From positions 434,001 through 498,000 of the forward strand of contig NIVC01000350.1 in NCBI GenBank assembly GCA_002269645.1: DNA of 64,000 nt. The letters are read 5' to 3'. The notes below the pieces were generated by a model. It ran no database searches and was not told the DNA's origin. It worked only from the letters and a program-made list of their open reading frames with translations. Shown one piece after another: positions 17,148 through 53,569 of the stretch. The DNA comes from Macrostomum lignano (lineage: Eukaryota). The translations under genes and the position numbers were made by a program. Position 1 is the stretch's first letter. Every line of letters starts with the position of its first letter.

Positions 17148-18797
17148 TCACAAGCCAATCTGCCTCTGTCGCTGCTGTTGCTGCTGCCGCTGCTGCTGCC
17201 GCTGGTGGTGGCGGGCGGCGGGCCGCTGCTCAACTGCAGCAACGCAGCCGCAGGATCGCCAGCTCCGAGGTCGATCCGGCCCGGCGAGTCGCTGCAGCTG
17301 CGGTTGAGCATCGGCGGCGCAGGCGGCAGCCGCTCCTGCCACTCGCTGCTTGTCGGCAGCGCCACCGGAGCCAGCAGGTGGCATTTCTATGTCAGACTGA
17401 TCGGCCAGCTTCGCCATCAGTCCTCAGTGCTGATTCTGCGCACTCGCCAGCTCGGCGGCTCGCAGGTCGCCATGGTGACGCACAAAAACCAGGGCTTGTA
17501 CCGAGCATTCGCAGTGCAGTATTGGAGCATCTATGCCAGCCTGAGCAGCCCATCTCTGGCGGGCTCATCAGATGAGGTGCTGCTGGACATCGAGCTGGTG
17601 ACGAAGTGTCCCAGGAACTGGTTCTACAGCAACGGCAGCTGCTACGGTGCGGCGTCTGTAGAGAACTCGTTTGCGTCGTTCGACGAGGCGGTGACTGGGT
17701 GCCGTCACGTGGGAGCCAACCTGGCGATGGACTTCGGGTCCGTCAGTGAGTTGAGGAGCGGCCTGTCCGCCTCAGGCTGGCCACCCGATCAGCCGGTGTG
17801 GATCGGGGCGGCAGCCAGCAAGTACTCGGTGTACTTTCTCAGTGCCAAGGAGCTCGGGCTGCCTCTTGTGTGAGTCTTCTACTAGTTAATGAGCATTTTT
17901 TCGATCTTTTTTAAATCGATTGAATCGAAACTTTTTCTCTGCAGGGTGGAAGAGTCTCGGGACTTCAGCCACGGCATCTCGATGAACTGTTCGCGCTGGT
18001 CTTGCCGCTGCGTGTTTGTTGCTAAGGGCGAATACTTCTTGGCTGACTGCGACAAGAAGCTGCCCTACCTGTGCAGCGGCTGCGCTGACTGTTTAGTCCG
18101 ACCGGTTTACGACTTGGACGGCCTCGATGACTTGTTGGACGGATCTCTTGTCTCTGATGACGAAAAAGTTTGCTCCGGCTTCAGCTGCGGGCTGTTAATC
18201 TTTGGCTGTCTTTTTGGCGCTGTCCTGTTTGGGCTGTTTTTCGCGCGAGACAATGACTGCCCCACCAGCAGGCCGGCCTCGCGACTGCGCACCTGCCTGA
18301 GCCGGCTTCGGTCCCGGCTGCGCAGGTGTCTGCGATTCACGCGTTCTCGAGCTGCCAGCGGTGTGCGCGATGGCGGCACGCCCGATCTGGAAGATGTGGC
18401 AAACTCTCAGACTGAGTCAGTTGCTACGGCAACCGTTGCTACGGATCCTGGAAACATTGACGTCGCAGTGGACGATTCGGCCGACGGCGGCCCGCCGAGC
18501 TACGATGTGGCGGCTGCGGTGTCGGAGATTTTGAACTCAATAGACTCGGACTCGGTTGTCATGGAAACCAATGCAGCAGAGTCCGGCACCGGTGCTGAAT
18601 TGTATGCTCCGCCAGATGATGACGAAGGACCTCCGAGCTACGCTGAAGCGGCAGCCGCAGCCACGCCGAGTCCGTCCGCGCTGACCGCCGCATCAGCCGA
18701 CTCGGTCGAGGACTCGCCGAACCAGCCGGAGCCTCCGCCGTCCTACGCTGCCGCTCTGGCCGCCTTTGGCGACGACGGTGGCGCCAGCGAAGCCTGA
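17148..18797 (+). CDS. CUB-like + C-type lectin type I membrane protein, member A. Exons 17148-17869 and 17945-18797; the start codon must be supplied by splicing
   Basis: Hydrophobic leader LPLSLLLLLPLLLPLVVAG, then CPRNW..SNGSCY...FDEAVTGCRHVGANLA...WIG. Phase-2 75-nt intron GT|GTGAGT...GCAG|G. C.CV...YFLADCDKKLPYLC, TM GLLIFGCLFGAVLFGLFF, three PPSY motifs. Confidence 0.85.
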
Positions 18798-19449
18798 TGG
18801 CATCGAAGTTGCATCGCTTGTTGCCTATCTTGCTAATCTGTTAGTTGAAATGAGCGGAATTCCTGGCCCTTTATGGAGCAGCACCAGCTACCTGACAGAC
18901 TAAGCTATTTCCCTGGTCTGCAGACTCTCGATGCATTGCTTCGCTGTGATCGCTTATTTTATGTGGCCAAATATTTCTGGCATACTTTGCATTGTTTTTG
19001 TGTAACCTGTAATTTTTTTTACATTTTTTCCTTCACACCTTCAGATACAAGTATTCTTGTATTTATTTAACAAAGACTACATTTTCTTAGTTTATAAAGT
19101 ACATTGTTGCGAATGTCTACTGCTGCTGTGTCTAGTTCATCCGTCCAATAGTCGTAATTTTCTGGCAAAAATGTTTTGCAAAAAATCAAAAGTTCTTAGT
19201 TTATATTGTACTGTTTAATCTTAGATCTTTGTAACATAATCTTATTTTTTTTCTCAAACCCGTAAAAGTGGGATCAGAGGCTCTAAAGATTGTCTGTTCA
19301 TGTGCCTTTGTAAAGCTTATTGCGATAGACCCGTATATTTATTTGTTAATTTTTGTTTTTCTTTCTTTGTTCTCAGTTCCTTGTGCTAATATTTAGAACC
19401 TGAAAATAGTATTAGTACAACAAACAGTATGTTTAGTGAAGCTCGTTTA

Positions 19450-20638
19450 TTGAATCTGCCTCTCAGCTCCGCCTCAACTCATTGAATCTGCCTCTCAGAG
19501 TCTCAGCTCCCCCTCAACTCATTGAATCTGCCTCTCAGCTCCCCCTCAACTCATTGAATCTGCCTCTCAGCTCCCCCTCAACTCATTGAATCTGCCTCTC
19601 AGCTCCCCCTCAACTCATTGAATCTGCCTCTCAGCTCCCCCTCAACTCATTGAATCTGCCTCTCAGCTCCCCCTCAACTCATTGAATCTGCCTCTCAGCT
19701 CCCCCTCAACTCATTGAATGTGCCTCTCAGCTCCCCTCAACTCATTGAATCTGCCTCTCAGAGTCTCAGCTCCCCCTCAACTCATTGAATCTGCCTCTCA
19801 GAGTCTCAGCTCCCCCTCAACTCATTGAATGTGCGTCTCAGCTCCCCCTCAACTCATTGAATCTGCCTCTCAGAGTCTCAGCTCCCCCTCAACTCATTGA
19901 ATGTGCGTCTCAGCTCCCCCTCAACTCATTGAATCTGCCTCTCAGAGTCTCAGCTCCCCCTCAACTCATTGAATGTGCGTCTCAGCTCCCCCTCAACTCA
20001 TTGAATCTGCCTCTCAGAGTCTCAGCTCCCCCTCAACTCATTGAATCTGCTTCTCAGAGTCTCAGCTCCCCCTCAACTCATTGAATCTGCCTCTCAGAGT
20101 CTCAGCTCCCCCTCAACTCATTGAATCTGCCTCTCAGAGTCTCAGCTCCCCCTCAACTCATTGAATCTGCCTCTCAGAGTCTCAGCTCCCCCTCAACTCA
20201 TTGAATCTGCCTCTCAGAGTCTCAGCTCCCCCTCAACTCATTGAATCTGCCTCTCAGAGTCTCAGCTCCTCCTCAACTCATTGAATCTGCCTCTCAGAGT
20301 CTCAGCTCCTCCTCAACTCATTGAATCTGCCTCTCAGAGTCTCAGCTCCCCCTCAACTCATTGAATCTGCCTCTCAGAGTCTCAGCTCCTCCTCAACTCA
20401 TTGAATCTGCCTCTCAGAGTCTCAGCTCCTCCTCAACTCATTGAATCTGCCTCTCAGAGTCTCAGCTCCCCCTCAACTCATTGAATCTGCCTCTCAGAGT
20501 CTCAGCTCCCCCTCAACTCATTGAATCTGCCTCTCAGCTCCCCCTCAACTCATTGAATGTGCCTCTCAGCTCCCCCTCAACTCATTGAATCTGCCTCTCA
20601 GAGTCTCAGCTCTTCCTCAACTCATTGAATCTGCCTCT
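19450..20638. repeat. 32/40-bp minisatellite between members A and B
   Basis: attgaatctgcctctcag(agtctcag)ctccccctcaactc; a block of short units, then alternating units, then long units. Confidence 0.97.
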
Positions 20639-20708
20639 CCTAGGTTTATGAGCAATCAATTGTAATAAATGCAACAATCTTCTTTTGCCACTTCAGCCTC
20701 AATCGGCA

Positions 20709-22511
20709 ATGTGTCGCCTCGAGCATCCAGTGTTCCTGCTGCAGCTGCTTCTGCTGCCGCTGATTCTGTTGCCAGGCGTTTCTAGCCAAAGCGCCTCGTT
20801 TCCCGTGTACAGCTGCAGTGATGGGTCCAGCCCTGCCTACTTCACTCCAACGGAAACCCAGTTTGGCCTTCGACTAGAAATCAGCGAAGCTGTACCAACA
20901 TGCCACGTGCTTATCCGCAACAACCTGCTAACATCCGCCTATTATTACATCCGGGTCAACGGCAGCCTGAAGTCAACGTATACGCGGCTCAGCCTGAGCA
21001 CCAACCATGGCTCTGGAGGCGAGTTCGTTGCTTCCCTGACTTCCTCCAATGATACCGTGTACCGGGCATTCGCCACGCCTGGAAACAGCCTGTACGCCAT
21101 CTTGTCCAGCAGCCTGCCGTCTCCATTCTACAACGAGCTGATCATGCTAGACATTGAGGCCGTTCACGGCTGTCCATCCTGGTGGGTCTCCTACGGCAAA
21201 GAGTGCTTCGGCTCTGCGCGTCCCGACGCATCAGGGACCACTTTTAATACCGCCCTCGGCGCGTGCCGCCAGGTGCGAGCTAATTTAGCCTTGAGCTTTG
21301 ACTCCAGCAGCGCGCTTAAATCGGCAATTTCGAGTTCAGGCTGGTCTAGCTTGACAAAGGTGTGGCTTGGGGCCGCCGACTCTTCGTCTGGAGTGTACTT
21401 TTTGGACGCCAATAAGTTTCTCGTGAGGTAAGCAGAGCACAACAGCTTCCTGTCTTACGTTCTTATCGGGTGAACTAATTAGCATCAATTATCTCTACAG
21501 TGTCTTACTCTCTTATCAGGTGAACTAATTAACATCAATTATCTTCTCAGTGTCTTACGTTCTTATCAGGTGAACTAATTAACATCAATTATCTCTACAG
21601 TGTCTTACTCTCTTATCAGGTGAACTAATTAACATCAATTATCTTCTCAGTGTCTTACGTTCTTATCAGGTGAACTAATTAACATCAATTATCTCTACAG
21701 TGTCTTACTCTCTTATCAGGTGAACTAATTAACATCAAGCTACTTGTCTCAATTTGTTACCAATTGACTCTATTGCTAGTTGCATCGTAGTTAATGCCTA
21801 AGCTCCTATACTGAACATTTATTACTCACTCCCTCCCTCTGCTCCCGATTTTTCAGCTCTAGCGGTAGTCTCAAGTTCTACAGCTCAAGCTCCAGTAGCT
21901 CCGGCTGTTCAACTGGCAGCTGCCGCTGCGTGATCTACAGATTCAACTCGTACTACCGCGAGAACTGCTGGAAGTATCTTCGCTACTTGTGCAGCAGCAG
22001 CATCGGCGGAGAGAGCGAATTCCACAACCTCACTACGCTTGACCGGACTCTGAGTAGCAAAAAGTCTTCGAGCAGTTTTTTCTCGTTTCCCTACTGGTCC
22101 ATCAGCCTGATCATCGGCGGCCTCACCGTGCTCGCCGTGTTCGGCACCCGGATGGCGTTCTACCATCGGGCTGTGGCAGCTCAGCGACGGCGCGAAACGG
22201 CCGGAACTGGCGCTGGAACTCGTAGCGACCTGCCGCCGGCACCGCCCGGCAGCTACCCGGTGCAGCAGCAGCACCCGCCGCCACCGCCGCTGCAGCAGCC
22301 GGCCGCCTACGACAATTCGTCTTTTAACTATCCGAATCCCGCCGCCGCGGGAGCGCCGATGCCGCCGGCCTACAATGCCTGGTACATGCCGCCGCCCGGC
22401 ACTGCCGCCAGCGCTCCAACCGATGCCGACGTCGGCGACAAGCCGCCGCCGTATGAAGCTGCCGCTGGGATGCCAAATCAGCCGATGCCGCCGCCCGAAG
22501 GCAACAACTAG
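20709..22511 (+). CDS. CUB-like + CTLD receptor, member B. Exons 20709-21427 and 21857-22511 (457 aa)
   Basis: Signal peptide MCRLEHPVFLLQLLLLPLILLPGVSS; CPSWW..YGKECF; WLG; phase-2 intron AG|GTAAGC...TTTCAG|C; CRCVIY..NSYYRENCWKYLRYLC; TM; PPAY and PPPY. Confidence 0.9.
21450..21738. repeat. Alternating 50/51-bp repeat in member B intron
   Basis: gtgtcttac(g/t)..cttatcaggtgaactaattaacatcaattatc(tctaca/ttctca). Confidence 0.93.
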
Positions 22512-22659
22512 GCGGCACTTTTGAAGTATGAACCCGTTTAACTGAATGAGTGTAAAAATTCACAACAATCATTGACATGACTCACAATTCATATTTGTCT
22601 AATTCTCTGATGCAAACTAATAAGCGATGAAGCTTGATCTCCATGAGGAGGACACGGGA

Positions 22660-25121: not shown

Positions 25122-27338
25122 ATGTCGCCGAACTCCGCCATCAAAGCTGTACCTGCACTTTTAGCAGCGGCTTCAATTCTGGCCGCCGTCGCGTCGGGCC
25201 AGACATTTAACTGCACGACCAACTCCACACCGACTGTTGTGGCAGTGAACTCTTCGCGGTTTAGCGTCAGACTTAGTATAGACAGCACGGACAGTCTGTG
25301 CCACATTCTGCTTGTGAGCTCCGCCAGTTCTAGCGGCTATTTCTACGTTAGCCTAGCCAGCACCATGGAGTCTCGCTACTCTCGACTAAGGATCCAATCC
25401 GACTATCCGGGATCCAGGGTCGCCACGATTTCCTCCAGCAGTCAGTCTCGTTACCAATCGTTCGCAACAAAGTCCAACCGGCTGTACGCCTCGCTGAGCA
25501 GACTGTTCTCCAGCCGGTCCACCGTTGACAGCGTCCTGCTGAATGTGCACCTGGTCACCGCGTGCCCGGACGGATGGGTTCTCCACTCGGGCAGGTGCTA
25601 CGGCCCCGCGTCATTGAACAGCACAGTTGCTAGCTTTTCCACCGCCATTATCGCGTGTCGTTACGTGCAAGCCAATCTGGCTATGGGATTCGCTGACGTC
25701 ACCAGGACTCTGGGCGCTGCTCTGCAACTCGCCGGCTGGACTGACGGCCGGCCTGTCTGGGTTGGCGCCGCCTGGAAGAGCAAACCCGAGGCTGTGTACT
25801 TCTTGAACAATACCATATTTATCAGGTAAGCTGGTGGCTTCACTGCCATGCTGAGGTACACTAGTGTGACATGCTGATGTACACATGGCACTAGTATGCC
25901 ATGCTGATGTACACTAGTATGCCATGCTGATGTACGCTAGTGTGCCATGCTGATGTACGCTAGTATGCCATGCTGATGTACACTAGTATGCCATGCTGAT
26001 GTACGCTAGTATGCCATGCTGATGTACACTAGTATGCCATGCTGATGTACGCTAGTATGCCATGCTGATGTACACTAGTATGCCATGCTGATGTACGCTA
26101 GTATGCCATGCTGATGTACACTAGTATGCCATGCTGATGTACACTAGTATGCCATGCTGATGTACGCTAGTATGCCATGCTGATGTACGCTAGTATGCCA
26201 TGCTGATGTACACTAGTGTGCCATGCTGATGTACGCTAGTATGCCATGCTGATGTACACTTGTGTGCCATGCTGATGTACACTTGTGTGCCATGCTGATG
26301 TACACTTGTGTGCCATGCTGATGTACACTAGTGTGTCATGCTGATGTACACTTGTGTGTCATGCTGATGTACACTTGTGTGCCATGCTGATGTACACTTG
26401 TGTGTCATGCTGATGTACACTTGTGTGTCATGCTGATGTACACTTGTGTGCCATGCTGATGTACACTTGTGTGTCATGCTGATGTACACTTGTGTGCCAT
26501 GCTGATGTACACTTGTGTGCCATGCTGATGTACACTTGTGTGTCATGCTGATGTACAATTGTGTGCCATGCTGATGTACACTTGTGTGCCATGCTGATGT
26601 ACACTTGTGTGTCATGCTGATGTACACTTGTGTGCCATGCTGATGTACACTAGTGTGCCATGCTGATATCCAACCGGTGTGAAATGCTGATATCCAACCG
26701 GTGTGACATGCTGATATCCAACCGGTGTGACATGCTGATATCCACCGTAAACCTCTGATAGCCACCTGGAGCCCTATTCTAACAAAATCCGTTCTAACCT
26801 TTGCAGTTCCAGCGTTAAGAAGTCCTGCACCAGTGACTCGTCCAAGTGTCGTTGCGTGCACTACACAGAGCTGAGCACTGCTTTCTTCCACCGGCAGAGC
26901 TGCTCAACTAAGCAAAGCTACCTATGCAGCTGCGCCGTTGGCGGAGATTCCAAATTCTATTCGCTGTTCTCTGAGGATGAGGACAAGACCAGTCGGGCCT
27001 GGATTGTCGGTGTCGTGTTTGCAGTCATTTTTGTTTTCGTTATGTCGGTGGCTGTCGGCACGAAGATCAAGCAGAAACTGACCATCCGGCGGTCCATTTC
27101 CGCCGCCAATGGCCCACGCTTCTCGACAACGGATGTCATTTCCAACAACTTGTACCCGGAGCCGCTGGCGCCGCCGTCATACAATTACGGTGGCAACTGC
27201 GACGAGCAACCGCCGAGCTACAACGAAGCTGTGTCCACCGGGGCTGCCGTTCCTTCGGCTCCAACCCCTGAGGAGATTTACGGCGCTGGGCACTTCCAGC
27301 AGGCAGCTAATTGGAAAGGAGTGCAGAAATTCGACTGA
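25122..27338 (+). CDS. CUB-like + CTLD receptor, member C. Exons 25122-25825 and 26807-27338 (411 aa)
   Basis: Signal peptide; CPDGW..HSGRCY...FSTAIIACRYVQANLA...WVG; phase-2 intron AG|GTAAGC...TTGCAG|T; CRCVHY...RQSCSTKQSYLC; TM WIVGVVFAVIFVFVMSVAVG; two PPSY motifs. Confidence 0.9.
25850..26745. repeat. 23-bp minisatellite in member C intron
   Basis: Unit gccatgctgatgtacactagtat, drifting to cacttgtgt along the array. Confidence 0.96.
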
Positions 27339-29533: not shown

Positions 29534-31854
29534 ATGTGTCACCGGCAGCTGCAGTTTCTTATTTTTGTTTTGTCCTCGCTGCTCCTAGCCGTTCCATTGC
29601 TCAGCCAGGCTGTTGACCGCTACGGCTGCACCCACAGAACAGGCAGACCGGCCATAGTGAGCATCAACTCTTCAGCCTACAACGGCACCACCAGATTTAG
29701 CGTGGAGCTGAACCTGGTCAACATTAGCTATTGCCACGCCGAGTTCCACGGCGTCGGCGGGATGTACTTTTACGTGCGCCTCAGCAGCAGCCTGTCTAAA
29801 CGCTTGTCCGTATTCAGCATCGGGCCCGAGTTCGGCTCGGCTCCGTTGGCCTTGGTTACCACGGATAATCAAACTGACTATCGGGCATTTGCCACCCCTA
29901 GCAACAAATTTTACGTTAAGCTTTTCACCCGTGCGTTATCTTCTTCGTTTTCTTATTACCCCGACAGCATCGTGCTGGACGTTGAACTGGTCAAGACTGG
30001 CGCCTGTCCGGCTGGCTGGTTGTACAGAGACGGTCTCTGCTACGGCGCCGCGCATCCAAATAACTCGCGGGCCACTTTCACCAACGCTGCCGTTGGTTGC
30101 CGTTACGTGCGCGCCAATTTGGCGCTGGGCTTTGTCTCTTCAACAGCCGACGTACTGGGTCTGGCCAGCACGACGACCTGGCCGACAGGTCAAGATACCT
30201 GGGTTGGTGTGGCCGACACCTCCAAAGGCGTGTTTTTCCTGGATAGTGACAGCTTCTACTATGGGTGGGTTGCTTCAGCTTCTGTTTTTCCTGGATAGTG
30301 ACAGCTTCTACTATGGGTGGGTTGCTTCAGCTTCTGTTTTTCCTGGATAGTGACAGCTTCTACTATGGGTGGGTTGCTTCAGCTTCTGTTTTTCCTGGAT
30401 AGTGACAGCTTCTACTATGGGTGGGTTGCTTCAGCTTCTGTTTTTCCTGGATAGTGACAGCTTCTACTATGGGTGGGTTGCTTCAGCTTCTGTTTTTCCT
30501 GGATAGTGACAGCTTCTACTATGGGTGGGTTGCTTCAGCTTCTGTTTTTCCTGGATAGTGACAGCTTCTACTATGGGTGGGTTGCTTCAGCTTCTGTTTT
30601 TCCTGGATAGTGACAGCTTCTACTATGGGTGGGTTGCTTCAGCTTCTGTTTTTCCTGGATAGTGACAGCTTCTACAATGGGTGGGTTGCTTCAGCTTCTG
30701 TTTTTCCTGGATAGTGACAGCTTCTACTATGGGTGGGTTGCTTCAGCTTCTGTTTTTCCTGGATAGTGACAGCTTCTACAATGGGTGGGTTGCTTCAGCT
30801 TCTGTTTTTCCTGGATAGTGACAGCTTCTACAATGGGTGGGTTGCTTCAGCTTCTGTTTTTCCTGGATAGTGACAGCTTCTACAATGGATGGGTTGCTTC
30901 AGCTTCTGTGCTACAAACCAGCAGGTTTTTATCCGGAGTTTAGTGACGTCTACTGGGCGTTTTGTGTTGCAAGTGCTTGTGCGTGAAAATACGATTCACA
31001 GTCATGAGGTTCAATCCCCAAGGCACAGAGAGTGTTCATGCCTGACGATTGGGAAGTCAGGGCTATTGTACACCCTGTGGAAGCGCGTGTGTGAGTGCGT
31101 GGCTGCGTTCAGTATTGGTGCGCTTGTTTTGTGCTCAGGAGTCAGCGGAACGGGCAGAATCGCCGTCAGCGCTGGCTGATAAGACGATGTCTCCGAAGGA
31201 AGGCGTTGCACCAGGGTGGCCCGCAGCGAATAATCTTCCATATTGCAGCTCACACCATCCTGCAAACCCAATAATTTCAGATCCAGCAGCTCCATAACGT
31301 TCAAGGGTTCGAGTACGTACACCTGCTTTGGCGGGAACTGCCGCTGTGTGTACTTTAGCGCGGGCTCGTTCTATCGGAATTATTGCGCTCAGATGCTGCG
31401 CTACCTGTGCAGCAGCCGGCCCGGCGGGGATGCGAAATTCTACAATTTGAGCACGCTGGACAAAAGCCTGGGAATCGGCGATGCCAGCTTCACGTTCAAC
31501 TACTACTGGATTATTGGGCTGGCTGTTGCAGCCGCTTTAACTGGGATCGGCTTTGGCATTCGATACCTCTGGTACCGCCGAGCCGTTGCCAATTCCCGGT
31601 CTGGTGCCCCTGTTGCCGCCAACTACGCCATGACCGCTGACGGCGCCGCTCAGCCGGTGGCGCCGGCGCCAGCCAACTCGCATTGCACGGCGCCGCCCGG
31701 CAGCTATCCGACCCAGCCAGCCGGATCCTACGGCCTCGGCGCCTACAGCCCTGGCATTGGCGCTAACGAGCCGGGCGCCGTTTCTATGGAGCCGAAACCG
31801 CCCGCCTACAACAGGATGCCTTCGGATCCACCGCCAGCCTACGACAAAGCCTAG
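29534..31854 (+). CDS. CUB-like + CTLD receptor, member D. Exons 29534-30264 and 31281-31854 (434 aa)
   Basis: Signal peptide; CPAGW.YRDGLCY...FTNAAVGCRYVRANLA...WVG; phase-2 intron GG|GTGGGT...TTTCAG|A; CRCVY..GSFYRNYCAQMLRYLC; TM; two PPAY motifs. Confidence 0.88.
30232..30907. repeat. 52-bp minisatellite made of the member D exon-1 end plus its splice donor (about 13 copies)
   Basis: Unit cctggatagtgacagcttctactatgg|gtgggttgcttcagcttctgttttt; the first copy is the real exon end. Confidence 0.95.
30970..31255 (+). mobile_element. Second SINE-like family copy in member D intron
   Basis: cgattcacagtcatgaggttcaatccccaaggcacagagagtgttcatgcctgacgat...ggagtcagcggaacgggcag, collinear with the 40248 copy. 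Confidence 0.7.
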
Positions 31855-33440: not shown

Positions 33441-36400
33441 ATGCTTCATTTCATGTCACCCTCTTTACTCGGGCCGGTCGCGCTCCCGTTGCTACTGGCA
33501 ACGGCGCTCAGCATCGTTGCCACGGCGGTTGCTGGCCACTGCCAGAGCTATCAACAGCTGAGAATCTCCTCTCACACATCAGCCCAGCTGACTGTCAATG
33601 CCACAAGCGGCTGCTCCAGCTTCGTTCACGCATTGAACTTCAGCGCCGCCCGCAGCAGCACCGGATTCACAGTCGCTATTGACAGCCTTCAGCTGTCCGG
33701 ATCGAACTCGCTAACCATCAGGAACGCCACCCGTTCGCAGATTTTGAAGGTGACAAATTTTTATACGTCAACAGTTGGCTGTCGGCATCTTATTGTTGGG
33801 TCCGGCAGCTGGTTCGAGGCTCGTCTGGTCTCCGATGCTCCGCCTTCGATGGAGTCTTCGGTGCTGCTGTCCGTGGCGCCAATCTTTAGCGGCGACTGCC
33901 CGTACGGATGGCGCAGCAGCGGCTCCGTCTGCTACGGAAACCCGGCAAAGAACGATTTGGTCACCTTCGACCAGGCGTTTGAGCTGTGCCGCATGCTGCA
34001 GGCGAACCTCGCCATCGACTTTACAAGCACAGGCACCCTGGAGGCTCTGGTTGCCGATAGCAGGCCCTACTGGGTCGGCGTCATGGAGTACAGCTCCAAG
34101 AGTACCAAGTTGTACTTTCTCAATGGCGAGTCCTTCTATATGCCGTAGGTGTTTTTTTTCTCCAGCCACCTCTGTCAAACATAAGTAGAAGTTTCGTTTC
34201 TTTATATGCCACTGCTTCCCTGTGACGGAAACTACATCAAATGTCTCGATCTGTTATTGTTTTAAATGGCCAGGTACAGAGAAGTCTTTTATGCGTGTGG
34301 AGTCCAATTTATATACGCTCGTAGTGCTTATTAATGTGCATTGCTTAAATACTCGTAGGACATGACAGAGATAGAATCAGACTAAGATGAAATGGTAAAG
34401 AGGATGAGAAGCTGAGCTATTGAAGGAGGTCTGCGGGCACCCTGTTGCCAACAGGCCTATTCGGCGCCATCGTTCCAAAACTCCTAAGCACACACGAGTA
34501 CAAACGCGTGGATACTGTACGCAGACACGCACTCATATACACGCTCACACAGGGTGTACAGTAGCCCCGATCGTCAGGCATGTACACTCCCTGTGCCTTG
34601 AGGGTTGGCTCTCATGGCTGTGAATCGCACAGCAACCCCCAGGCTAATTTTCGCACACAAGCCCCTTTTGGGGCAGCCAATAAGCAAGGAGCAAAACTTA
34701 TGCAAATCCTTTCAAGAAGCACATTTTCTTAAGAACCAAGTCCTTCAGTTTTCAGTTTTAAAAAACGCCTTATTGGAGTAAAATTGTCACGGACAAAGTT
34801 GTTTGCTATAAATCTCTTTTTTCTAAAAGCAACAAAACGAAACAACAAAATAAAGCCTTTGCAAAGATAGCAGGCATTCCTCCCAAATAGCAAGCACCCC
34901 CAGAAAGCAAGAATCCATAAATAGAAAGCGTCCCTCAGACAGCAAGCATCCCTGGATAGAAAGAATCCATAAATAGAAAGCGTCCCTCAGACAGCAAGCA
35001 TCCCTGGATAGAAAGAATCCCTAGATAGAAAGCGTCCCTCAGACAGCAAGCATCCCTGGATAGAAAGAATCCATAAATAGAAAGCGTCCCTCAGACAGCA
35101 AGCATCCCTGGATAGAAAGAATCCATAAATAGAAAGCGTCCCTCAGACAGCAAGCATCCCTGGATAGAAAGAATCCATAAATAGAAAGCGTCCCTCAGAC
35201 AGCAAGCATCCCTGGATAGAAAGAATCCATAAATAGAAAGCGTCCCTCAGACAGCAAGCATCCCTGGATAGAAAGAATCCATAAATAGAAAGCGTCCCTC
35301 AGACAGTAAGCATCCCTGGATAGAAAGAATCCATAAATAGAAAGCGTCCCTCAGACAGCAAGCATCCCTGGATAGAAAGAATCCATAAATAGAAAGCGTC
35401 CCTCAGACAGCAAGCATCCCTGGATAGAAAGAATCCATAAATAGAAAGCGTCCCTCAGACAGCAAGCATCCCTGGATAGAAAGAATCCATAAATAGAAAG
35501 CGTCCCTCAGACAGCAAGCATCCCTGGATAGAAAGAATCCCTAAATAGAAAGCGTCCCCCAGACAGCAAGCATCCCTGGATAGAAAGAATCCCTAGATAG
35601 CTACCCCCCCCCAGATAGCAAGCTACTAATGTTACTAATTGCTGCTATTACGCTCATATGTGCCCCGGGAGTCAGCCGAATGGGCGCCCATTGCGCCAGG
35701 AAGCCCACAGCCGTTCCTGCAAAGATTTGTTATTTTAGCCATCTGTATTTTAGTGCAAACAGGCATACATGTAAGCTCACCATATGAATCAGTGCAACTG
35801 TAATAGTCACATTCAAACTGGGAGATCGCACCAAACCCCACCACAGGCTGTCCAAGGTATCGAAGTCATCATCGTACTGCTCGTGGTCCAGCAGCTGCGA
35901 ATGCGTCTTCTACCGCAGCGGCTCGTTTTATCGAGCCAGCTGCGACTCCCGCTTTGCCCAGCTGTGCTCCGCTCCAAAAGTCGGCCAACCGGCCAAGTAT
36001 TACAATCCCCAGCTAATCTCAGTCTATATCGGACAGCGGACGAGCGACAACCCAACCGCATGGATACTTCGGTTCAGCAGCTTCTGGCCGGCTTTCTTCG
36101 TTTTCGGCCTTGTGGTGGCCGGCTCGGCCATCGGTTTTCGCGTATTTTTTCGAATGCGCGCCGTTCGAATGATGGAGCGCCGGCGTCAGATGCCTGTCGG
36201 CGTGTCGACCGTCGCAGTCAATCCGCCGCCGCCTCCGGGCTCGTATCCGACGCAGGCTACTTCGCCACCACCTCCGCCTTCGGGCTCGTACCCGATGCAG
36301 CCGCCGCCTCCTCCAGTCTCCTACCCGAACTCCGTGCCGCCACAGCCGCAGGCGCCGGAGCCTCAGCCGCCTCCGTACAGCTACTTCAACAACTCCGGCT

Positions 36401-36456
36401 ACCAGCCTGACTCGGCGGCTGCTGGTGACGCTGAACCGAGCGACAACAAGAAGTGA
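33441..36456 (+). CDS. CUB-like + CTLD receptor, member E. Exons 33441-34144 and 35847-36456 (437 aa)
   Basis: Signal peptide; CPYGW..SGSVCY...FDQAFELCRMLQANLA...WVG; phase-2 intron CC|GTAGGT...CACAG|G. Exon 2 frame, translated by hand: CECVFYRSGSFYRASCDSRFAQLC...FWPAFFVFGLVVAGSAIGF; PPPY. Confidence 0.88.
34430..34680 (-). mobile_element. Second SINE-like family copy in member E intron
   Basis: Reverse complement contains gtgcgattcacagccatgagag...catgcctgacgat...tgtacaccctgtgtgagcg. Confidence 0.7.
34890..35600. repeat. 52-bp minisatellite in member E intron (unrelated to the member D repeat)
   Basis: atagaaagcgtccctcagacagcaagcatccctggatagaaagaatccataa. Confidence 0.96.
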
Positions 36457-36679
36457 AACTCATCGACATACGAGAATGTTAATAGTCAGAACCGTTTTAT
36501 CGGAATTGGAGCGCTTTACAATTGTTGCCGTGATGGCTGTTTCTATAATTTACCTCTGTTGATGTTTATCTGGTATTTGGTTTATCATTCTTTTTTATTT
36601 AGTTGTTTCAGCTTCGAAACAAGGTGGAGCTTTGTGAAAAAGAACAGGCCATTGTGGACAAAACAATTCTCACCGACGG

Positions 36680-39395: not shown

Positions 39396-41507
39396 ATGGC
39401 CGCATTTCTGAATCCTCGATTTTCACCGGTCGCGTTCCCGTTGCTACTGGCAACGGCGCTCAGCATCGTTGCCACGGCGACTGCCGCCCGCTGCCAGAGC
39501 TATCAACAGCTGAGAATCTCCTCTCACACATCAGCCCAGCTGACTGTCAATGCCACAAGCGGCTGCTCCAGCTTCGTTCACGCATTGAACTTCAGCACCA
39601 CCCGCAGCAGCACCGGCTTCTCAGTCGCTATTGACAGCCTTCAGCTGCACGGATCGAACTCGCTAACCATCAGGAACGCCACCCATTCGCAGATTTTGAA
39701 GGTGACAAATTTTTATACGTCAACAGTTGGCTGTCGGCATCTTATTGTTGGATCCGGCAGCTGGTTCGAGGCTCGTCTGGTCTCCGATGCTCCGCCTTCG
39801 ATGGAGTCTTCGGCGCTGCTGTCCGTGGCGCCAATCTTTAGCGGCGACTGCCCGTACGGATGGCGCAGCAGCGGCTCCGTCTGCTACGGAAACCCGGCAA
39901 AGAACGATTTGGTCACCTTCGACCAGGCGTTTGAGCTGTGCCGCATGCTGCAGGCGAACCTCGCCATCGACTTTACAAGCACAGGCACCCTGGAGGCTCT
40001 GGTTGCCGACAGCAGGCCCTACTGGGTCGGCGTCATGGAGTACAGCTCCAAGAATACCAAGTTGTACTTCCTCACTGGCGAGCCCTTTCACATGTCGTGA
40101 GTGTCCGATTGATCTAGCAGGTGGCGGCTCACTGAGAGCACTTAAAAACCGGCCTAAATTAAGATCGATCTGAAGTTCGCGATTAACCATAAGTTGCATG
40201 TACATTAGGTCTAGTAGGCGATCGCACTGAAGCCTTCCTAAAAAAGCGGGGTAGGGCAGCTTATCGGTAAACGCGCACGACTCTCGCGCGGCGATCTCTG
40301 CGGTTCGATTCCGTGCTCATTCATTTGGGGCTCGTGCGATTGGCTTACGGAGGTTGTTGTGCGATTCACAGCCATGAAGGCCAACCCCCGAGGTACAGAG
40401 TGTGCATGCCTGACGATTAGATAGTCAGGGCCGCTGTACACAATGTGAGTGCGTGCGTGCCAGCGTACAGTATCCGCGCCTTTGTACCAGCATGTGCTCA
40501 TGAGTCAGCGGAATGGGCAGAGTTGCCGTCAGTGCTGGTTGTTGGACGATGTCGCCAAAGTGAACTGAAGTAATACAGAGTTAAGTATCTTGTTCAAGAA
40601 CACAAATTGTTCCAACTGGGACGAGAATCGAACCCCCGACCTTTCAGTCGTGAGTCCGACGCTCGAACCACTAGGCTACAATCTCCAAAATAAGCTGTCT
40701 CGGGGCACTTCTAAATTTATTTTCCGAAACTAAAGCTTTAATTTTTTATTCATCGTGTGTTTAGTCCAAAAGCCCATGCACTTCGCTATTTTTTTACGAA
40801 TTTTCTCAGCTTGTCACTAAGACAACTCGCTATAAATAAAAATAAATCAGTTACAGAGCATATCGCACCAACCCCACCACAGGCTGTACGACGTGCCCAA
40901 GACTCCATCGTACTGCTCAGGAACAAGCGACTGTCCGTGCGTTTTTTACCAGACCGGCTCGCTATATCGAGCCGACTGCTACTCGAACTTTGCCCAGCTG
41001 TGCTCCGCTCCAAAAGGCGGCACACCGGCAAAGTTTTACAATCCAAATAGATTATTAATCTACATCAAAGAGTGGTCCGAGGCCAATCCCTCTGAAATTA
41101 CGCTGATTTTTAGACGCTACTGGCCAGCTTTCCTAGCCTTATTCTTTGTCGTGGGCGGCTCCATTCTAGGCTATCGAATCTATCGACAACGAACTTCCAG
41201 ACTGATGGCCCGCCGAAACCAAATGGCGGGCGGATTGCCCGTTGCTGCCGTTGCATCCGCAGCCAATCCGCCGCCGCCTCCGGGCTCGTACCCGATGCAT
41301 GCTCCAGCCGCCTACCCGAATCCGATGCAGGCTCCAGCCGCCTACCCGAATTCGATGCAGCCGCCTCCTCCTCAAATCTCAAACCCGAGCTCGGTGCCAC
41401 AGCAGCAGCCGTCGGAGCCGCAGCCGCCTCCGTACAACTACCAGTACTTCAACAACTCCGGCTACCAGCCAGACTCTGCCAATGCTCCAAGCGAGATCAA
41501 AAAATGA
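39396..41507 (+). CDS. CUB-like + CTLD receptor, member F. Exons 39396-40096 and 40883-41507 (441 aa)
   Basis: Exon 1 is nearly identical to member E; phase-2 intron TC|GTGAGT...CACAG|G; CPCVFYQTGSLYRADCYSNFAQLC; TM; PPPY. Confidence 0.9.
40248..40557 (+). mobile_element. Second SINE family, most complete copy with tRNA-like head
   Basis: ggggtagggcagcttatcggtaaacgcgcacgact...GGTTCGATTCC (B box at 40302), followed by the shared body. Confidence 0.72.
40560..40679 (-). mobile_element. CORE-SINE copy 3
   Basis: Reverse complement: tagcctagtggttcgagcgtcggactcacgactgaaaggtcgggggttcgattc...tttgtgttcttgaacaagatacttaactctgtattacttcagttca. Confidence 0.75.
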
Positions 41508-42327
41508 AAATTATTTTGAAAACTATTTCGGAGCTATTATATTGACACGGTTAAACTGTACTTTTACTTAAATTGATCATTATAATATATTTTGACTCGA
41601 TGTTTGTGTTCGAGCATCAACGTCTTGGTAATTTGCACTTTAATAAGAAAAACTTCAAATTTTTACTAAAAAACTCAATATTTTAAGCATTCTAAGCTTT
41701 TTTTCACCATAAATGGCTTATATTAGCTGGATAACTGGTATTTTTACAACTGCACTAATTCGCATATGTAGTTATTTGGATTGAGCCCAATTTCATTCGG
41801 GCATTATTAATAGCATGACAAAAAGCGCGTAATTAGTGTTGTGTTTTCTCTAATAAACTTATTGAACTATTTGTTTTATTCAATACAGACTTTCTATAAC
41901 AGCTCATAGATATCTATCATGTTTATCAGGTTTATCAGGTCTTGACCAAACATTTATTACTTCTAGTAGTATCTCTTAATCCAAAGAGCCTAACTGTCTT
42001 TAATTGTTTTCTCACGTTTTTTTTACACAGCTACAATTCTAGAAACATTCCCAGAGAACAAATATATTATTTTCAACCCAAATGGTAATTTTCTTTCTGT
42101 GTTGATTTTTTCAATTGTACTGCTACGAGTACTATTAGTAGAATTTGTGGAGTATGTCAGCAAATTTTAAATACAAGAATTTTTTAAAAATATTTCGCAA
42201 GGCATCCTCAAAAAACTTTTTTAGTACACATACTGTACGCAATTACGCGCTAATAACGTCAACAACCGCTCGAACCGATATGAAACTTTCAATCAATGTG
42301 ACGGCCGGATACCTGCATGCTGCTTCA

Positions 42328-43203
42328 ATGCTATGCATGTAGCTCATACTTTCATTAACAGTAGGAGTCCCAAGCATTTTCCGCCCTGACAATTGCTTTG
42401 CTGCGCCGGAACGTAGCAACGCAGGCACACGAACTTTAAGAACACGGGCCAAATTTTTGTTGCGCACCTTCTCAAACGCCCCCCGGACGATCCAGGTATA
42501 GTGTATTCGACGATTCTGCCAGGGCGGATTTTCCCATAAGCGCCAGTGTATTCAGCCAATCAACACTGCCTCAGTGCAACCTTGCCAAGCCTCCAAATTT
42601 TATCAGCACGTCGACCAGGTGTCTGCATCAGCTCTGAATTCGTTGGTCACTGGTCTTCACCCAGGCAGGTAGAGCTTCTGGATCTTTAACAGAAGGCAGC
42701 AGGTGACTATATATTGTAGATACCCCTGGTGTGAATTTCTAGAGTTTCGCTGATCAAGCCTCGACAGTGGGCAAAACCTCAACTGCTGCACATCTCAAGC
42801 ATTCCCCGTCATCACCCCGACGCCGTCGGCACCTTCAACAGACGACACCGTGCAGTAGACAATACTCCTTAGTCTGGACGACTCCTCCTACTCCAGTAGT
42901 CTTATTTAGCTGACCGCTTCGTCTAGCGATCCGACCGGCTGGCTCCAACCCGCCAATTTGACAGTGACCGCTGCAGCCGTGACGAACTGTTTTGCTCGGT
43001 CCGCTACGGCGTTCCATGGAAAAATTGCAACGTTAACTTTTACCAAACGGCCTATCTGTGTCACATGTATAACTTGCTGCAGGCCAGTCATTACCAGCAC
43101 CGCGGAGTCCACTTCTTAAGGCAACGGAGTGCCCTATTGGGTCGGAGTCGCGAGTCAGAATAGGAGGCTTTATTTTATCAACGGCCCGCCTTTCTATCAG
43201 ACG
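42328..43203 (+). pseudogene. Degenerate seventh member (G) of the receptor cluster, exon 1 only; E/F-like
   Basis: DRCSRDELFCSVRYGVPWKNCNVNFYQTAYLCHM aligns with GDCPYGWRSSGSVCYGNPAKNDLVTFDQAFELCRM. It continues after frameshifts as PYWVGV and FYFINGPPFYQ, ending at a phase-2 donor AC|GTAAGT at the family position. Contains in-frame stops. The 5' boundary is uncertain. Confidence 0.75.

Positions 43204-53508: not shown

Positions 53509-53569
<61 letters not shown>

What the first reader, a model, noticed from the sequence alone, without database searches (positions are those of the whole stretch)
17148..43203. Tandem cluster of six CUB-like/C-type-lectin/PPxY membrane receptors plus a pseudogene: a candidate lineage-specific sensing or immune receptor family
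Seen in sequence: six co-oriented two-exon genes of 411-525 aa share one architecture. Each has a signal peptide; a ~130-aa beta-rich domain with a Cys pair and, in A-D, a 'YRAFAT.SN.LY..L'-like motif; a CTLD (CPxGW...CY...F..A...C....NLA...WxG...C.C....C....LC); one TM helix; and a Pro-rich tail. A phase-2 intron splits the CTLD at the same position in every member. Apart from E/F, the ectodomains are very divergent while Cys spacing is kept. Established knowledge: tandem, rapidly diverging CTLD receptor arrays with birth-and-death turnover are typical of innate recognition systems. Inference: this is an uncharacterised expanded receptor family, and I do not recognise it as a named gene family. 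The ORF track splits each gene and misses the right frame for most of member E exon 2, so automated annotation may have missed it.
Basis: partly seen in the sequence, partly recalled or inferred. Interest (0 to 1): 0.9.

Follow-up and report, generated by a model that had tools for sequence, protein, structure and literature searches.

The report
Flatworm CUB–C-type-lectin receptor gene cluster
Six neighbouring genes of the flatworm Macrostomum lignano, plus one decayed fragment, encode an uncharacterised family of cell-surface receptors with a CUB-like domain, a C-type-lectin-like domain and a PPxY tail; the cluster is real and expressed, but it is already annotated as hypothetical proteins, consists of old duplicates, and has no demonstrated immune role.

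Summary
The window is Macrostomum lignano contig NIVC01000350.1 (~434001-498000). It carries six co-oriented two-exon genes (411-525 aa) and one exon-1 relic. Every phase-2 splice junction I predicted matches the RNA-seq-guided GenBank models.

Each protein has a signal peptide, a divergent CUB-like beta-sandwich, a genuine C-type-lectin-like domain (CTLD), a 'GGxxxFY' stalk, one TM helix and a Pro-rich tail. The CTLD lacks the EPN/QPD and WND sugar/Ca2+ motifs and is structurally closest to NK-receptor-type CTLDs. The tail has PPxY motifs near the C-terminus.

- The genes are annotated, as 'hypothetical protein' or 'C-type lectin domain-containing protein'.
- A-D are old duplicates with saturated synonymous sites and omega<1, so rapid divergence is not shown.
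- The family is not confined to this cluster. It has at least five other M. lignano loci, and scallops have canonical CUB-CTLD-TM-PPSY counterparts.

Extra findings: E and F exon 1 has been homogenised by gene conversion. Member A has no genomic start codon and probably takes its AUG from the spliced leader.

The most likely mechanism, which is inferred, is a non-lectin binding receptor whose PPxY tail recruits WW-domain (NEDD4-type) ligases for ubiquitin-dependent trafficking. An immune role remains untested.

The parts
17148..17869 (+). Member A (Mlig017692.g2), exon 1: signal peptide, CUB-like domain and the first two thirds of the CTLD. There is no in-frame genomic ATG. An in-frame 'tttcag|' acceptor lies at 17147/17148.
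   Evidence: the spliced leader ends in ATG
17945..18797 (+). Member A, exon 2: CTLD C-terminal third, stalk, TM helix and a long tail with three PPSY motifs (75-nt phase-2 intron at 17870-17944).
20697..21427 (+). Member B (Mlig017692.g3, PAA85058.1), exon 1. The annotated 5' end at 20697 directly follows a 'cttcag|' acceptor. The genomic ATG is at 20709.
21857..22511 (+). Member B, exon 2: CTLD end, stalk, TM helix and tail with PPAY, PPPY and PPGSYP.
25122..25825 (+). Member C (Mlig004342.g1, PAA85059.1), exon 1.
   Evidence: exact 411-aa match
26807..27338 (+). Member C, exon 2, with two PPSY motifs. The intron holds a 23-bp minisatellite (25844-26739).
29534..30264 (+). Member D (Mlig004342.g2, PAA85060.1), exon 1.
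   Evidence: exact 434-aa match to UniRef A0A1I8IW30
31281..31854 (+). Member D, exon 2, with two PPAY motifs, the last one 3 residues from the C-terminus.
33441..34144 (+). Member E (Mlig031472.g1, PAA85061.1), exon 1. The stretch 33474-34152 is a gene-conversion tract shared with F.
35847..36456 (+). Member E, exon 2, with PPPY and two copies of PPxGSYP. The ORF list misses most of it for lack of a start-like codon.
39396..40096 (+). Member F, exon 1 (annotated from 39411, 436 aa). The stretch 39426-40104 is 96.2% identical to E.
40883..41507 (+). Member F, exon 2. It is only about 70% identical in DNA to E exon 2. It carries PPPY.
42931..43202 (+). Decayed relic of the 3' part of an E/F-like exon 1 ('PTGW ... 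PYWVGV...LYFINGPPFYQT'). It has an in-frame stop and has lost its cysteines, but keeps the phase-2 GTAAGT donor at 43203. It is not annotated.
30231..30909 (+). 52-bp minisatellite (13 copies, 99% identical) whose unit is the end of D exon 1 plus the splice donor. Only the first donor gives an open frame.

Best explanation
SHOWN. This is a tandem array of six expressed paralogs in Macrostomum lignano. Each encodes a type I membrane glycoprotein with this layout:
- a signal peptide;
- a divergent CUB-like beta-sandwich in which only one disulfide is retained;
- a C-type-lectin-like domain without the Ca2+/sugar-binding motifs, structurally closest to NK-receptor/LOX-1-type CTLDs;
- a short 'GG(D/T)xx(F/Y)Y' stalk;
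- one TM helix;
- a proline-rich cytoplasmic tail with 1-3 PPxY motifs, the last one 3-38 residues from the C-terminus.

The array arose by old local duplications of one member of a wider family. That family has at least five other loci in M. lignano, relatives in an unidentified transcriptome, and scallop counterparts with a canonical CUB domain. One further copy decayed. The ectodomain-encoding exon 1 of E and F is kept nearly identical by gene conversion, while their stalk, TM and tail diverge.

INFERRED MECHANISM. The ectodomain binds a protein or other non-canonical ligand rather than a sugar through Ca2+. The PPxY tail recruits WW-domain proteins, most plausibly NEDD4-family HECT ubiquitin ligases. 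The receptor, with whatever it holds, would then be ubiquitinated, internalised and sorted. In other words, it would be a ligand-capturing or turnover-regulated surface receptor.

INFERRED TRANSLATION START. Member A, and possibly B, obtains its initiator AUG from the trans-spliced leader.
For: Gene structure and expression:
- Splice models were derived from sequence. They are identical to RNA-seq-guided GenBank models (annotation method in PMC5730564).

CTLD:
- Pfam Lectin_C scores 18-21 bits (cut-off 22.6) over the full model in B, D, E and F.
- The relatives pass the cut-off.
- The family profile hits solved CTLDs at E 1e-9 to 1e-49.
- The AlphaFold model (pLDDT 80) matches NKR-P1B, CD69, LLT1 and LOX-1 at TM 0.76-0.81.
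- There is no EPN/QPD, and 'FYR' stands where WND would be.

CUB-like domain:
- Foldseek's top hits are CUB domains, led by spermadhesin at E 1e-5 and TM 0.67.
- hhalign against the scallop CUB aligns end to end with both cysteines in register, at E 1e-4.

PPxY:
- It is present in all six proteins and all full-length relatives, including the scallop proteins.
- It is enriched over composition (A p<5e-5, C 0.001, D 0.02, B 0.05).
- It always lies near the C-terminus.
- That PPxY is the ligand of group I WW domains is established knowledge.

Purifying selection: omega is 0.2-0.5 between paralogs, and the coding sequence is almost unchanged between the duplicated blocks.

Gene conversion: E/F dS is 0.03-0.08 in exon 1 against 0.70-0.82 in exon 2, and exon 1 cross-matches between cluster copies.

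SL AUG:
- The leader ends in ...GCATG.
- In-frame acceptors lie at 17147|17148 and 20696|20697.
- The 5' region of A is identical in a second contig.
- There is a precedent in Schistosoma mansoni.
Against: - No binding, localisation or expression data exist for any member.
- PPxY can also bind YAP, dystrophin-type or other WW proteins, so the NEDD4 step is a guess among several.
- In E and F the single PPPY is not statistically unexpected in such proline-rich tails (p=0.36).
- The CUB assignment rests on fold and a weak profile match. Pfam CUB and a PDB sequence search found nothing.
- Lack of EPN/WND does not exclude glycan binding by another surface, as in Dectin-1.
- The annotated 5' end of A (17163) is 15 nt downstream of the proposed trans-splice acceptor, so that site is not directly confirmed.
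Confidence: 0.5

Rival explanations
1. Innate-immune pattern-recognition array. The paralogs would be diversified non-self sensors, comparable to the C. elegans clec genes or the vertebrate NK-complex CTLD receptors.
For: - Tandem array with a dead copy.
- Ectodomains only 29-45% identical on a fixed cysteine frame.
- NK-receptor-like CTLD fold.
- CUB+CTLD combinations are common among nematode immune-induced lectins (established knowledge).
- The E/F CUB-like region shows 11 non-synonymous against 3 synonymous changes.
Against: - No sugar/Ca2+ motif.
- Synonymous sites between A-D are saturated and omega is below 1, so divergence is explained by age.
- Copies in the duplicated blocks are nearly identical.
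- The 11:3 count is too small to be significant and lies inside a conversion tract.
- No ITIM, ITAM, TIR or death-type signalling motif was seen in the tails.
- No expression evidence.
Confidence: 0.2
2. Cell-cell or cell-matrix recognition and adhesion receptors, for example in epidermis, gut or reproductive tissue. The C-terminal PPxY would couple to WW-domain scaffolds or Hippo-pathway proteins (dystrophin-like, YAP/Yorkie) rather than to ubiquitin ligases.
For: - The last PPxY always lies close to the C-terminus, as in beta-dystroglycan (the comparison is from established knowledge).
- CUB and non-lectin CTLDs typically mediate protein-protein contacts.
- The architecture is conserved between flatworm and scallop, which suggests a housekeeping developmental role.
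Against: - Multiple PPxY copies, as in A, C and P0010, are more typical of NEDD4 substrates and adaptors.
- Nothing here discriminates between WW partners.
- Six-fold local expansion is unusual for a core adhesion receptor.
Confidence: 0.15
3. Pure NEDD4 adaptors in the manner of NDFIP, PMEPA1 or Commissureless. The main job would be to bring E3 ligases to other membrane proteins and clear them from the surface, with the ectodomain acting only as a selector of the client.
For: - PPxY enrichment and multiplicity.
- A weak CYYR1-like hit over the stalk, TM and tail of relative P0010 (E 0.013).
- E and F keep the same ectodomain but different TM and tail.
Against: - No sequence homology to known adaptors. 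The only Pfam match is a sub-threshold one on a relative.
- Known adaptors have small or no ectodomains, whereas two folded, cysteine-conserved extracellular domains are under constraint here.
Confidence: 0.12
4. Non-functional or artefactual: decaying duplicates or mis-assembled repeats in a highly repetitive, redundantly assembled genome.
For: - The region is packed with minisatellites.
- The assembly holds three copies of the cluster.
- A lacks an ATG.
- One member is a relic.
Against: - All six reading frames are open across both exons.
- Twelve positions (ten Cys, Trp, Gly) are invariant across 12 family members.
- omega is below 1.
- The coding sequence is conserved while the flanks diverge by 3-7%.
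- RNA-seq-guided models match.
- A's 5' end is identical on an independent contig.
Confidence: 0.03

Closest known systems
Uncharacterised scallop CUB-CTLD-TM-PPSY proteins (Mizuhopecten yessoensis XP_021358027.1, Argopecten irradians XP_069113099.1, Pecten maximus LOC117338375)
   Same: - Same order of parts: signal, CUB, single CTLD, a 'G-x-(P/T)-x-(I/V)Y(T/S)VP' stalk resembling the flatworm 'GGTxx(F/Y)Y(T/A)VP', TM helix, and a tail with PPSY 7-11 residues from the C-terminus.
- The CTLD also lacks EPN/WND.
- A phase-2 intron sits in the same CTLD loop, within 2 residues of the flatworm position.
   Different: - The scallop CUB is canonical (Pfam 41-46 bits, two disulfides). The flatworm domain has lost the second disulfide and any Pfam signal.
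- The scallop gene has about 8 coding exons, the flatworm genes have 2.
- Searches returned one to two clusters per scallop species, against at least 11 paralog types in M. lignano.
- Ectodomain identity is only 15-22%. They are equally unstudied.
Vertebrate group V / NK-receptor-like CTLDs (NKR-P1B, CD69, LLT1, LOX-1)
   Same: - Best structural matches (TM 0.76-0.81).
- Ca2+/sugar motifs are absent.
- The vertebrate genes also lie in tandem arrays (the NK gene complex is established knowledge).
   Different: - Those are type II proteins without CUB, usually disulfide-linked dimers. They signal through ITIM motifs or charged-TM adaptors, not PPxY.
- Sequence identity is 14-20%, and no orthology is implied.
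Caenorhabditis elegans CLEC proteins combining CUB and CTLD
   Same: CUB plus CTLD in one polypeptide, and large tandemly arrayed families (established knowledge, not tested here).
   Different: Most are secreted, lack a TM helix and a PPxY tail, and many are pathogen-induced. No specific similarity emerged in the exhaustive search.
Type I single-CTLD membrane proteins (CD302, layilin, chondrolectin) and CUB co-receptors (neuropilin, Kremen, NETO), plus attractin (CUB and CTLD in one type I protein)
   Same: Type I topology with a CTLD and/or CUB ectodomain. Kremen and neuropilin CUBs are among the fold hits.
   Different: None has the CUB-CTLD-stalk-TM-PPxY layout. The tails are unrelated. 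Attractin is a very large multi-domain protein.
PPxY-bearing membrane adaptors and substrates of NEDD4-family ligases (NDFIP1/2, PMEPA1, CYYR1, Commissureless) and beta-dystroglycan
   Same: Short cytoplasmic tails whose function depends on PPxY-WW contacts. The motif lies near the C-terminus as in beta-dystroglycan. There is a weak CYYR1-like match on relative P0010.
   Different: No detectable homology in the six window proteins. Those proteins lack CUB or CTLD ectodomains.

Membership tests
C-type lectin-like domain (CTLD) superfamily | Significant match to a CTLD sequence profile over the whole domain | tested here: met
   Individually the window proteins fall just below Pfam's cut-off (18-21 bits against 22.6 in B, D, E and F; none in A and C). 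The family profile matches solved CTLDs over positions 3-130 of 132 at E 1e-9 to 1e-49. The relatives P0010, P0036, P0043 and P0049 pass Pfam's cut-off.
C-type lectin-like domain (CTLD) superfamily | CTLD fold and the conserved cysteine / 'WIGL' framework | tested here: met
   The AlphaFold model (pLDDT 80) matches CTLDs at TM 0.7-0.8. Invariant residues include CPxGW, C(Y/F)G, the alpha-1 Cys, W(V/I)G, CxC, and the final two Cys.
Ca2+-dependent carbohydrate-binding C-type lectins (true lectins) | EPN or QPD tripeptide plus the WND motif that ligate Ca2+ and sugar | tested here: not met
   No EPN or QPD occurs in the loop before the CxC. 'F-Y-R' or similar stands at the WND position in all six proteins and in the relatives.
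CUB domain | Match to the CUB sequence profile | tested here: not met
   No Pfam CUB hit at E<=1. The N-domain profile finds no PDB chain at E<=10.
CUB domain | CUB beta-sandwich fold | tested here: met
   Foldseek's top hits are CUB domains: spermadhesin (E 1e-5, TM 0.67), Kremen, neuropilin, C1r CUB2 and PCPE-1. Other small beta-sandwiches also appear lower in the list.
CUB domain | Homology to a bona fide CUB in proteins of the same architecture | tested here: inconclusive
   hhalign of the N-domain against the scallop CUB gives probability 58% and E 9.8e-5 over 120 collinear columns, with both cysteines aligned. The family HMM alignments also run into the scallop CUB.
CUB domain | Four cysteines (two disulfides) and, in Ca2+-binding CUBs, the conserved acidic/Tyr site | tested here: not met
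   Only the first Cys pair is conserved. No acidic column is invariant in the N-domain alignment.
PPxY / WW-domain (NEDD4-type) regulated membrane proteins | PPxY in the cytoplasmic tail, more often than composition predicts and positionally conserved | tested here: met
   There are 1-3 motifs in each of the six proteins. Shuffling gives p<5e-5 (A), 0.001 (C), 0.02 (D), 0.05 (B) and 0.36 (E, F). The last motif lies 3-38 residues from the C-terminus in all 12 family proteins examined.
PPxY / WW-domain (NEDD4-type) regulated membrane proteins | Physical binding to a WW-domain ligase and ubiquitin-dependent trafficking | not testable with these tools
   This needs pull-down, yeast two-hybrid and cell-biological assays.
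Diversifying innate-immune receptor arrays | Tandem array with gene birth and death | tested here: met
   Six genes form one clade, and there is one relic.
Diversifying innate-immune receptor arrays | Accelerated or positively selected ectodomain evolution | tested here: inconclusive
   Between A-D, pS is 0.63-0.77 (saturated) and omega is 0.23-0.54. Between cluster copies there are too few changes. In the E/F CUB-like region omega is 1.25, but from only 14 changes inside a conversion tract.
Diversifying innate-immune receptor arrays | Expression in immune-relevant tissue or induction by challenge | not testable with these tools
   The gene IDs were not found in the text or held supplements of four M. 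lignano papers.

The most novel reading that the evidence does not exclude
This could be an ancient spiralian receptor class (CUB - non-lectin CTLD - conserved stalk - TM - C-terminal PPxY), shared by flatworms and molluscs, that has never been studied and that links extracellular recognition directly to WW-domain effectors (NEDD4-type ligases or YAP). In Macrostomum it would have expanded into a locally duplicated repertoire in which gene conversion keeps pairs such as E/F with the same binding ectodomain but different TM and tails. That would resemble paired receptors with one specificity and two outputs, used for non-self, symbiont or mate recognition.
Probability: 0.15. Interest if true: 0.65.

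Novelty: new variant of a known kind. Interest (0 to 1): 0.4.

Why it matters
CTLD receptors are a main route by which animals recognise ligands at the cell surface, yet almost nothing is known about them in flatworms or other spiralians. This cluster defines a compact, testable family with an unusual wiring: a CUB-like domain and a non-lectin CTLD outside the cell, and PPxY motifs inside. M. lignano offers transgenesis, RNAi and in situ hybridisation, so ligand, partner and phenotype can all be tested directly. The cluster also gives two clean examples of genome mechanics. One is exon-restricted gene conversion between neighbouring paralogs. The other is a gene whose start codon is probably supplied by the spliced leader, which explains why annotators label it 'partial'. 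If the function turns out to be ordinary receptor turnover, the value is mainly a correct annotation of about a dozen 'hypothetical' genes.

Tried and rejected
- **Word-indexed homology searches.** The full-length alignment, the ectodomain alignment and the scallop protein returned only 1, 3 and 6 hits. The proline-rich tails and low identity defeat the word filter. The exhaustive profile search was the informative one.
- **PDB sequence search with the N-domain profile.** No hits.
- **First AlphaFold run with 6 sequences.** The CTLD was poorly modelled (pLDDT 40-59). The 12-sequence run replaced it.
- **dN/dS between the three assembly copies of the cluster.** There were too few substitutions to say anything.
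- **dN/dS among A-D.** Synonymous sites are saturated, so only 'omega<1' can be said.
- **Expression look-ups.** Gene IDs were searched in the full-text library and in supplements of PMC5816591, PMC12896417 and PMC12732829, with nothing found.
- **Rfam scan of the window.** No matches. There is no SL RNA gene in the window.
- **Look-up of my spliced F protein.** F's annotation was recovered through E's locus instead.
- **Species of the RNA-seq runs SRR30276804/812 carrying relatives P0010 and P0043.** It could not be determined, and no spliced leader is visible at the contig 5' ends.
- **Exon 2 for the relic.** I looked downstream of the relic and found only chance-level matches (E>1).
- **tBLASTn across other flatworm genomes.** Not possible, because the DNA collections on hand are prokaryotic, viral or metagenomic.

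Full report
**Source and context**

The family alignment retrieved a 100%-identical GenBank protein, 'hypothetical protein BOX15_Mlig017692g2, partial [Macrostomum lignano]'. Locus retrieval places the window at about 434001-498000 of contig NIVC01000350.1 (660,553 bp, assembly GCA_002269645.1).

The cluster is flanked upstream by a TANGO6-like HEAT-repeat gene ending at 16851. Downstream lie an RRM protein (49485-49850, minus strand) and an LCAT-family gene (58948-60575). None of these is related to the cluster.

**Checking the observation**

ORF listing and three-frame translation show six + strand pairs of open frames.
- Each exon 1 ends at a GT donor in phase 2 at the homologous codon: GTGAGT, GTAAGC, GTAAGC, GTGGGT, GTAGGT and GTGAGT.
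- Each exon 2 is preceded by a polypyrimidine tract and CAG in the matching frame.
- Splicing gives proteins of 524 (A), 457 (B), 411 (C), 434 (D), 437 (E) and 441 (F) residues.

These models are independently confirmed.
- My C and D proteins are letter-for-letter in the public collection, as PAA85059.1 and UniRef A0A1I8IW30.
- The GenBank proteins for A, B and E carry exactly my junctions.
- F is annotated with the expected length.
- The GenBank annotation comes from a genome-guided, RNA-seq-based transcriptome, in which transcription units are cut at observed trans-splice and poly(A) sites (PMC5730564).

They are annotated, but only as 'hypothetical protein' or, in UniProt, 'C-type lectin domain-containing protein'. 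Several older gene models fuse or frameshift neighbours (P0003 and P0005-P0009).

**Architecture**

The six-way alignment and the 12-way family alignment show these features:
- an N-terminal hydrophobic signal;
- a ~125-residue domain with one conserved Cys pair, and in A-D the 'Y(R/Q)(A/S)FA(T/V)..N.(L/F)Y' motif;
- the CTLD framework CPxGW...C(Y/F)G...F..A...C(R)...ANL...W(V/I)G...(Y/F)FL...C...CxC(V)...C...(Y/Q)LC;
- a 'GG(D/T)xx(F/Y)(Y/H)' stalk;
- a hydrophobic TM segment;
- a Pro-rich tail;
- three to six N-glycosylation sequons per protein.

**The CTLD is genuine**

- Pfam Lectin_C matches B, D, E and F over model positions 2/3-106 of 107, just under the gathering score (18-21 bits against 22.6). 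A and C get no Lectin_C hit at E<=1.
- The more distant relatives pass the gathering score.
- A profile of the family's CTLD hits 205 solved CTLD chains at E<=0.01. These include PLA2R (9e-49), DEC-205, the mannose receptor, NKG2D (4e-14), REG4, KLRB1, DC-SIGN and Dectin-1.
- With the 12-sequence alignment, AlphaFold gives pLDDT 80 and pTM 0.77.
- Foldseek then returns CTLDs only. The highest TM-scores go to Ca2+-independent NK-receptor-type domains: NKR-P1B 0.78-0.81, CD69 0.79, LLT1 0.79 and LOX-1 0.76.
- The EPN/QPD and WND motifs that define sugar-binding C-type lectins are absent. The consensus has F-Y-R at the WND position.

By the defining features, this is a CTLD but not a classical lectin.

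**The N-terminal domain is CUB-like by fold**

- Sequence searches do not recognise the domain.
Other small beta-sandwiches rank lower.
- A profile-profile comparison with the canonical CUB of the scallop homologs aligns 120 columns end to end with both cysteines in register, at E 1e-4 and probability 58%.

The domain is best described as a degenerate CUB that has lost the second disulfide and any Ca2+-site signature.

**The tails**

- Every member has PPxY: three in A, two each in B, C and D, and one each in E and F.
- Residue shuffling shows this exceeds composition in A (p<5e-5), C (0.001), D (0.02) and B (0.05), but not in E and F (0.36).
- In all 12 family proteins examined, including the scallop ones, the last PPxY lies 3-38 residues from the C-terminus.
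- A second motif, PPxG(S/T)YP, recurs in B, D, E, F and two relatives.

**The wider family**

An exhaustive profile search of 1.84 billion representative proteins gave 128 hits. Most are generic CTLDs in multi-CTLD proteins. Those covering both domains, or carrying the stalk-TM-PPxY signature, are:
- other M. lignano loci: Mlig031192/029953/003925, Mlig008649, Mlig026538, and the adjacent pair Mlig018025/Mlig028623, which lack PPxY;
- one copy fused to a retrotransposon (P0012);
- two transcripts from RNA-seq runs of an unidentified organism (P0010 and P0043);
- scallop proteins with a canonical Pfam CUB (41-46 bits), Lectin_C (44-59 bits), TM helix and PPSY.

All scallop relatives are named 'uncharacterized'.

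The scallop stalk ('G-x-(P/T)-x-(I/V)Y(T/S)VPE') resembles the flatworm stalk. The Mizuhopecten gene has a phase-2 intron in the same CTLD loop, within two residues of the flatworm intron. This favours common ancestry of the whole architecture. The flatworm genes would then have lost all introns but this one. It is not proof, because conserved CTLD intron positions are widespread (established knowledge).

In a simple neighbour-joining tree without bootstrap support, the six window genes form one clade, ((E,F),(C,(A,(B,D)))). That is consistent with local tandem duplication.

**Tempo of evolution**

- Between A, B, C and D, synonymous sites are saturated (pS 0.63-0.77) and omega is 0.23-0.54 in both ectodomain domains. 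These are old duplicates under purifying selection, and 'rapid divergence' is not demonstrated.
- The assembly contains two further copies of the cluster, on NIVC01001008.1 and NIVC01000125.1, with the same gene order.
- Flanking and intronic unique DNA in those copies is 93-98% identical, while coding sequences differ by only 0-43 substitutions. D is identical over 433 codons. That is too few changes for a selection test.
- Such duplicated blocks fit the known redundancy and hidden polyploidy of this genome (PMC5730564).

**Gene conversion between E and F**

- DNA identity is 96.2% over 33474-34152 against 39426-40104. That stretch is exon 1 minus its first ~11 codons. Exon 2 is only ~70% identical, and the introns do not align apart from one short dispersed repeat.
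- Synonymous divergence is 0.03 (CUB-like) and 0.08 (exon-1 part of the CTLD). It is 0.71, 0.82 and 0.70 in the exon-2 CTLD part, the stalk+TM and the tail, and 0.46 in the signal-peptide codons.
- Window F exon 1 is even closer (98.5%) to the E-like exon 1 of the other cluster copy. Exchange is therefore recurrent.

As a result, E and F share one ectodomain but have different stalk, TM and tail.

**The relic**

At 42931-43202 one frame reads '...DPTGW...(stop)...PYWVGVASQNRRLYFINGPPFYQT'. It is followed by GTAAGT, so the intron would begin in phase 2 four codons after the conserved Phe, exactly as in E and F. tblastn to F gives E=7e-4 within the window. The cysteines are gone, no convincing exon 2 follows, and nothing is annotated there. 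It is a decayed exon-1 fragment, so the 'pseudogene' claim is supported, though modestly.

**Start codons**

- A has no in-frame ATG, GTG or TTG between the upstream stop and 17178. The ATG at 17138 is out of frame.
- The first in-frame ATG (17472) would delete the signal peptide and most of the CUB-like domain.
- The same 5' sequence occurs on an independent contig, so this is not an assembly error.
- An acceptor 'tttcag|' at 17147/17148 is in frame.
- The M. lignano spliced leader ends in ...TTGCATG (PMC8629364).
- Flatworm SL AUGs are known to serve as initiators (PMC9851317, citing Cheng et al. 2006).
- B's annotated 5' end (20697) directly follows 'cttcag|' and is also in frame with an SL AUG, 4 codons ahead of its own ATG.

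I infer that A takes its initiator from the SL, which would explain the 'partial' flag. The suffixes .g2 and .g3 suggest that A and B were cut from one transcription unit. This is my reading of the ID scheme and is unverified. A's annotated end (17163) is 15 nt inside the proposed exon, so the exact site still needs read-level confirmation.

**Mechanism**

Shown: these are surface-type I glycoproteins with two folded, constrained extracellular domains and a PPxY tail.

Inferred:
- The CTLD lacks the lectin motifs and resembles protein-binding NK-type CTLDs, and CUB domains usually mediate protein contacts. The ligand is therefore more likely a protein or non-canonical ligand than a Ca2+-bound sugar.
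- PPxY is the canonical ligand of group I WW domains. Multiple PPxY motifs in short tails of single-pass proteins are typical of NEDD4-family substrates and adaptors. The most economical model is therefore ubiquitin-dependent internalisation and sorting of the receptor and its cargo or partners.

The alternatives are an immune sensor, an adhesion or Hippo/dystrophin-type WW coupling, or a pure NEDD4 adaptor. None is excluded, and nothing here measures function.

**Novelty and verdict**

- It is not a new kind of system. It is an unstudied variant of CTLD receptors with an unusual domain and tail combination.
- No paper with this architecture was found, and no gene ID appears in the searchable literature.
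- The immune interpretation is a hypothesis without specific support.
- The claims of rapid divergence and missed annotation are not upheld.
- Interest is moderate.

Noticed in passing
window 30231-30909: A 52-bp minisatellite (13 copies, 99% identical) begins inside exon 1 of member D. Its unit contains the last ~34 nt of the exon plus the GTGGGT donor, so the splice donor is repeated 13 times. Only the first copy yields an open frame, because later ones run into TAG.
   Followed up: partly
window 17100-17180 and 20680-20710: Member A lacks any in-frame genomic start codon. An in-frame acceptor at 17147|17148 would let the spliced leader's terminal AUG start translation. B's annotated 5' end sits exactly on an acceptor (20696|20697) that is also in frame with an SL AUG.
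   Followed up: partly
window 33474-34152 vs 39426-40104; L005 10001-10662 and 15890-16562: Gene conversion is restricted to exon 1 of E and F (dS 0.03-0.08 against 0.7-0.8 in exon 2). Exon 1 also cross-matches between the duplicated cluster copies (F exon 1 is 98.5% identical to the E-like exon 1 of L005).
   Followed up: yes
window 15234-16293, 19461-20639, 22659-24157, 24646-25007, 25844-26739, 28480-29102, 31972-32819, 34889-35600, 36677-38501: Nearly every intron and spacer of the cluster holds a different long minisatellite (periods 12-52 bp, 13-74 copies), which creates long spurious ORFs on both strands. Array lengths differ greatly between assembly copies. For example, the 37-bp array is about 1.5 kb here and about 4.5 kb in L006.
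   Followed up: partly
window 29360-29476, 30992-31198, 34480-34640 (minus), 40349-40560, 39201-39317/40561-40676: A short dispersed repeat of ~110-210 bp (73-83% identical copies) recurs upstream of D and inside the introns of D, E and F, in both orientations. It may be a SINE- or MITE-like element. Rfam found no tRNA or other RNA family in the window.
   Followed up: no
L005 15875-22648 vs window 39396-41507: The F-like gene of the duplicated cluster spans 6.8 kb against 2.1 kb here, so its intron carries an insertion of roughly 5 kb that is absent from the window copy.
   Followed up: no
window 14884-16851: The last exons of a TANGO6-like HEAT-repeat gene (RTP1_C1 / TANGO6_N in the homeolog) end about 300 nt upstream of member A. 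An older UniProt model (A0A1I8GPA1) fuses it to member A. Its intron is a 30-bp minisatellite that reads through as an ORF.
   Followed up: partly
window 49485-49850 (minus) and 58948-60575 (plus): Two unrelated flanking genes: an RRM-domain protein (Pfam RRM_1, 54 bits) and an LCAT-family acyltransferase/phospholipase (Pfam LCAT, 80 and 72 bits). The LCAT-family gene's intron is another minisatellite.
   Followed up: partly
window 52000-54000: An extreme strand-composition stretch (GC skew -0.66, AT skew -0.51) gives long Ser/Leu/Pro-rich pseudo-ORFs. It is probably low-complexity CT-rich repeat.
   Followed up: no
P0012 (UniParc UPI0007A29404): An older M. lignano gene model joins an exon-1-like family member (with the 'YRSFATKGDSAY' motif and the CTLD start) to retrotransposon gag-pol sequence. 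This suggests a further family copy disrupted by, or adjacent to, a retroelement elsewhere in the genome.
   Followed up: no
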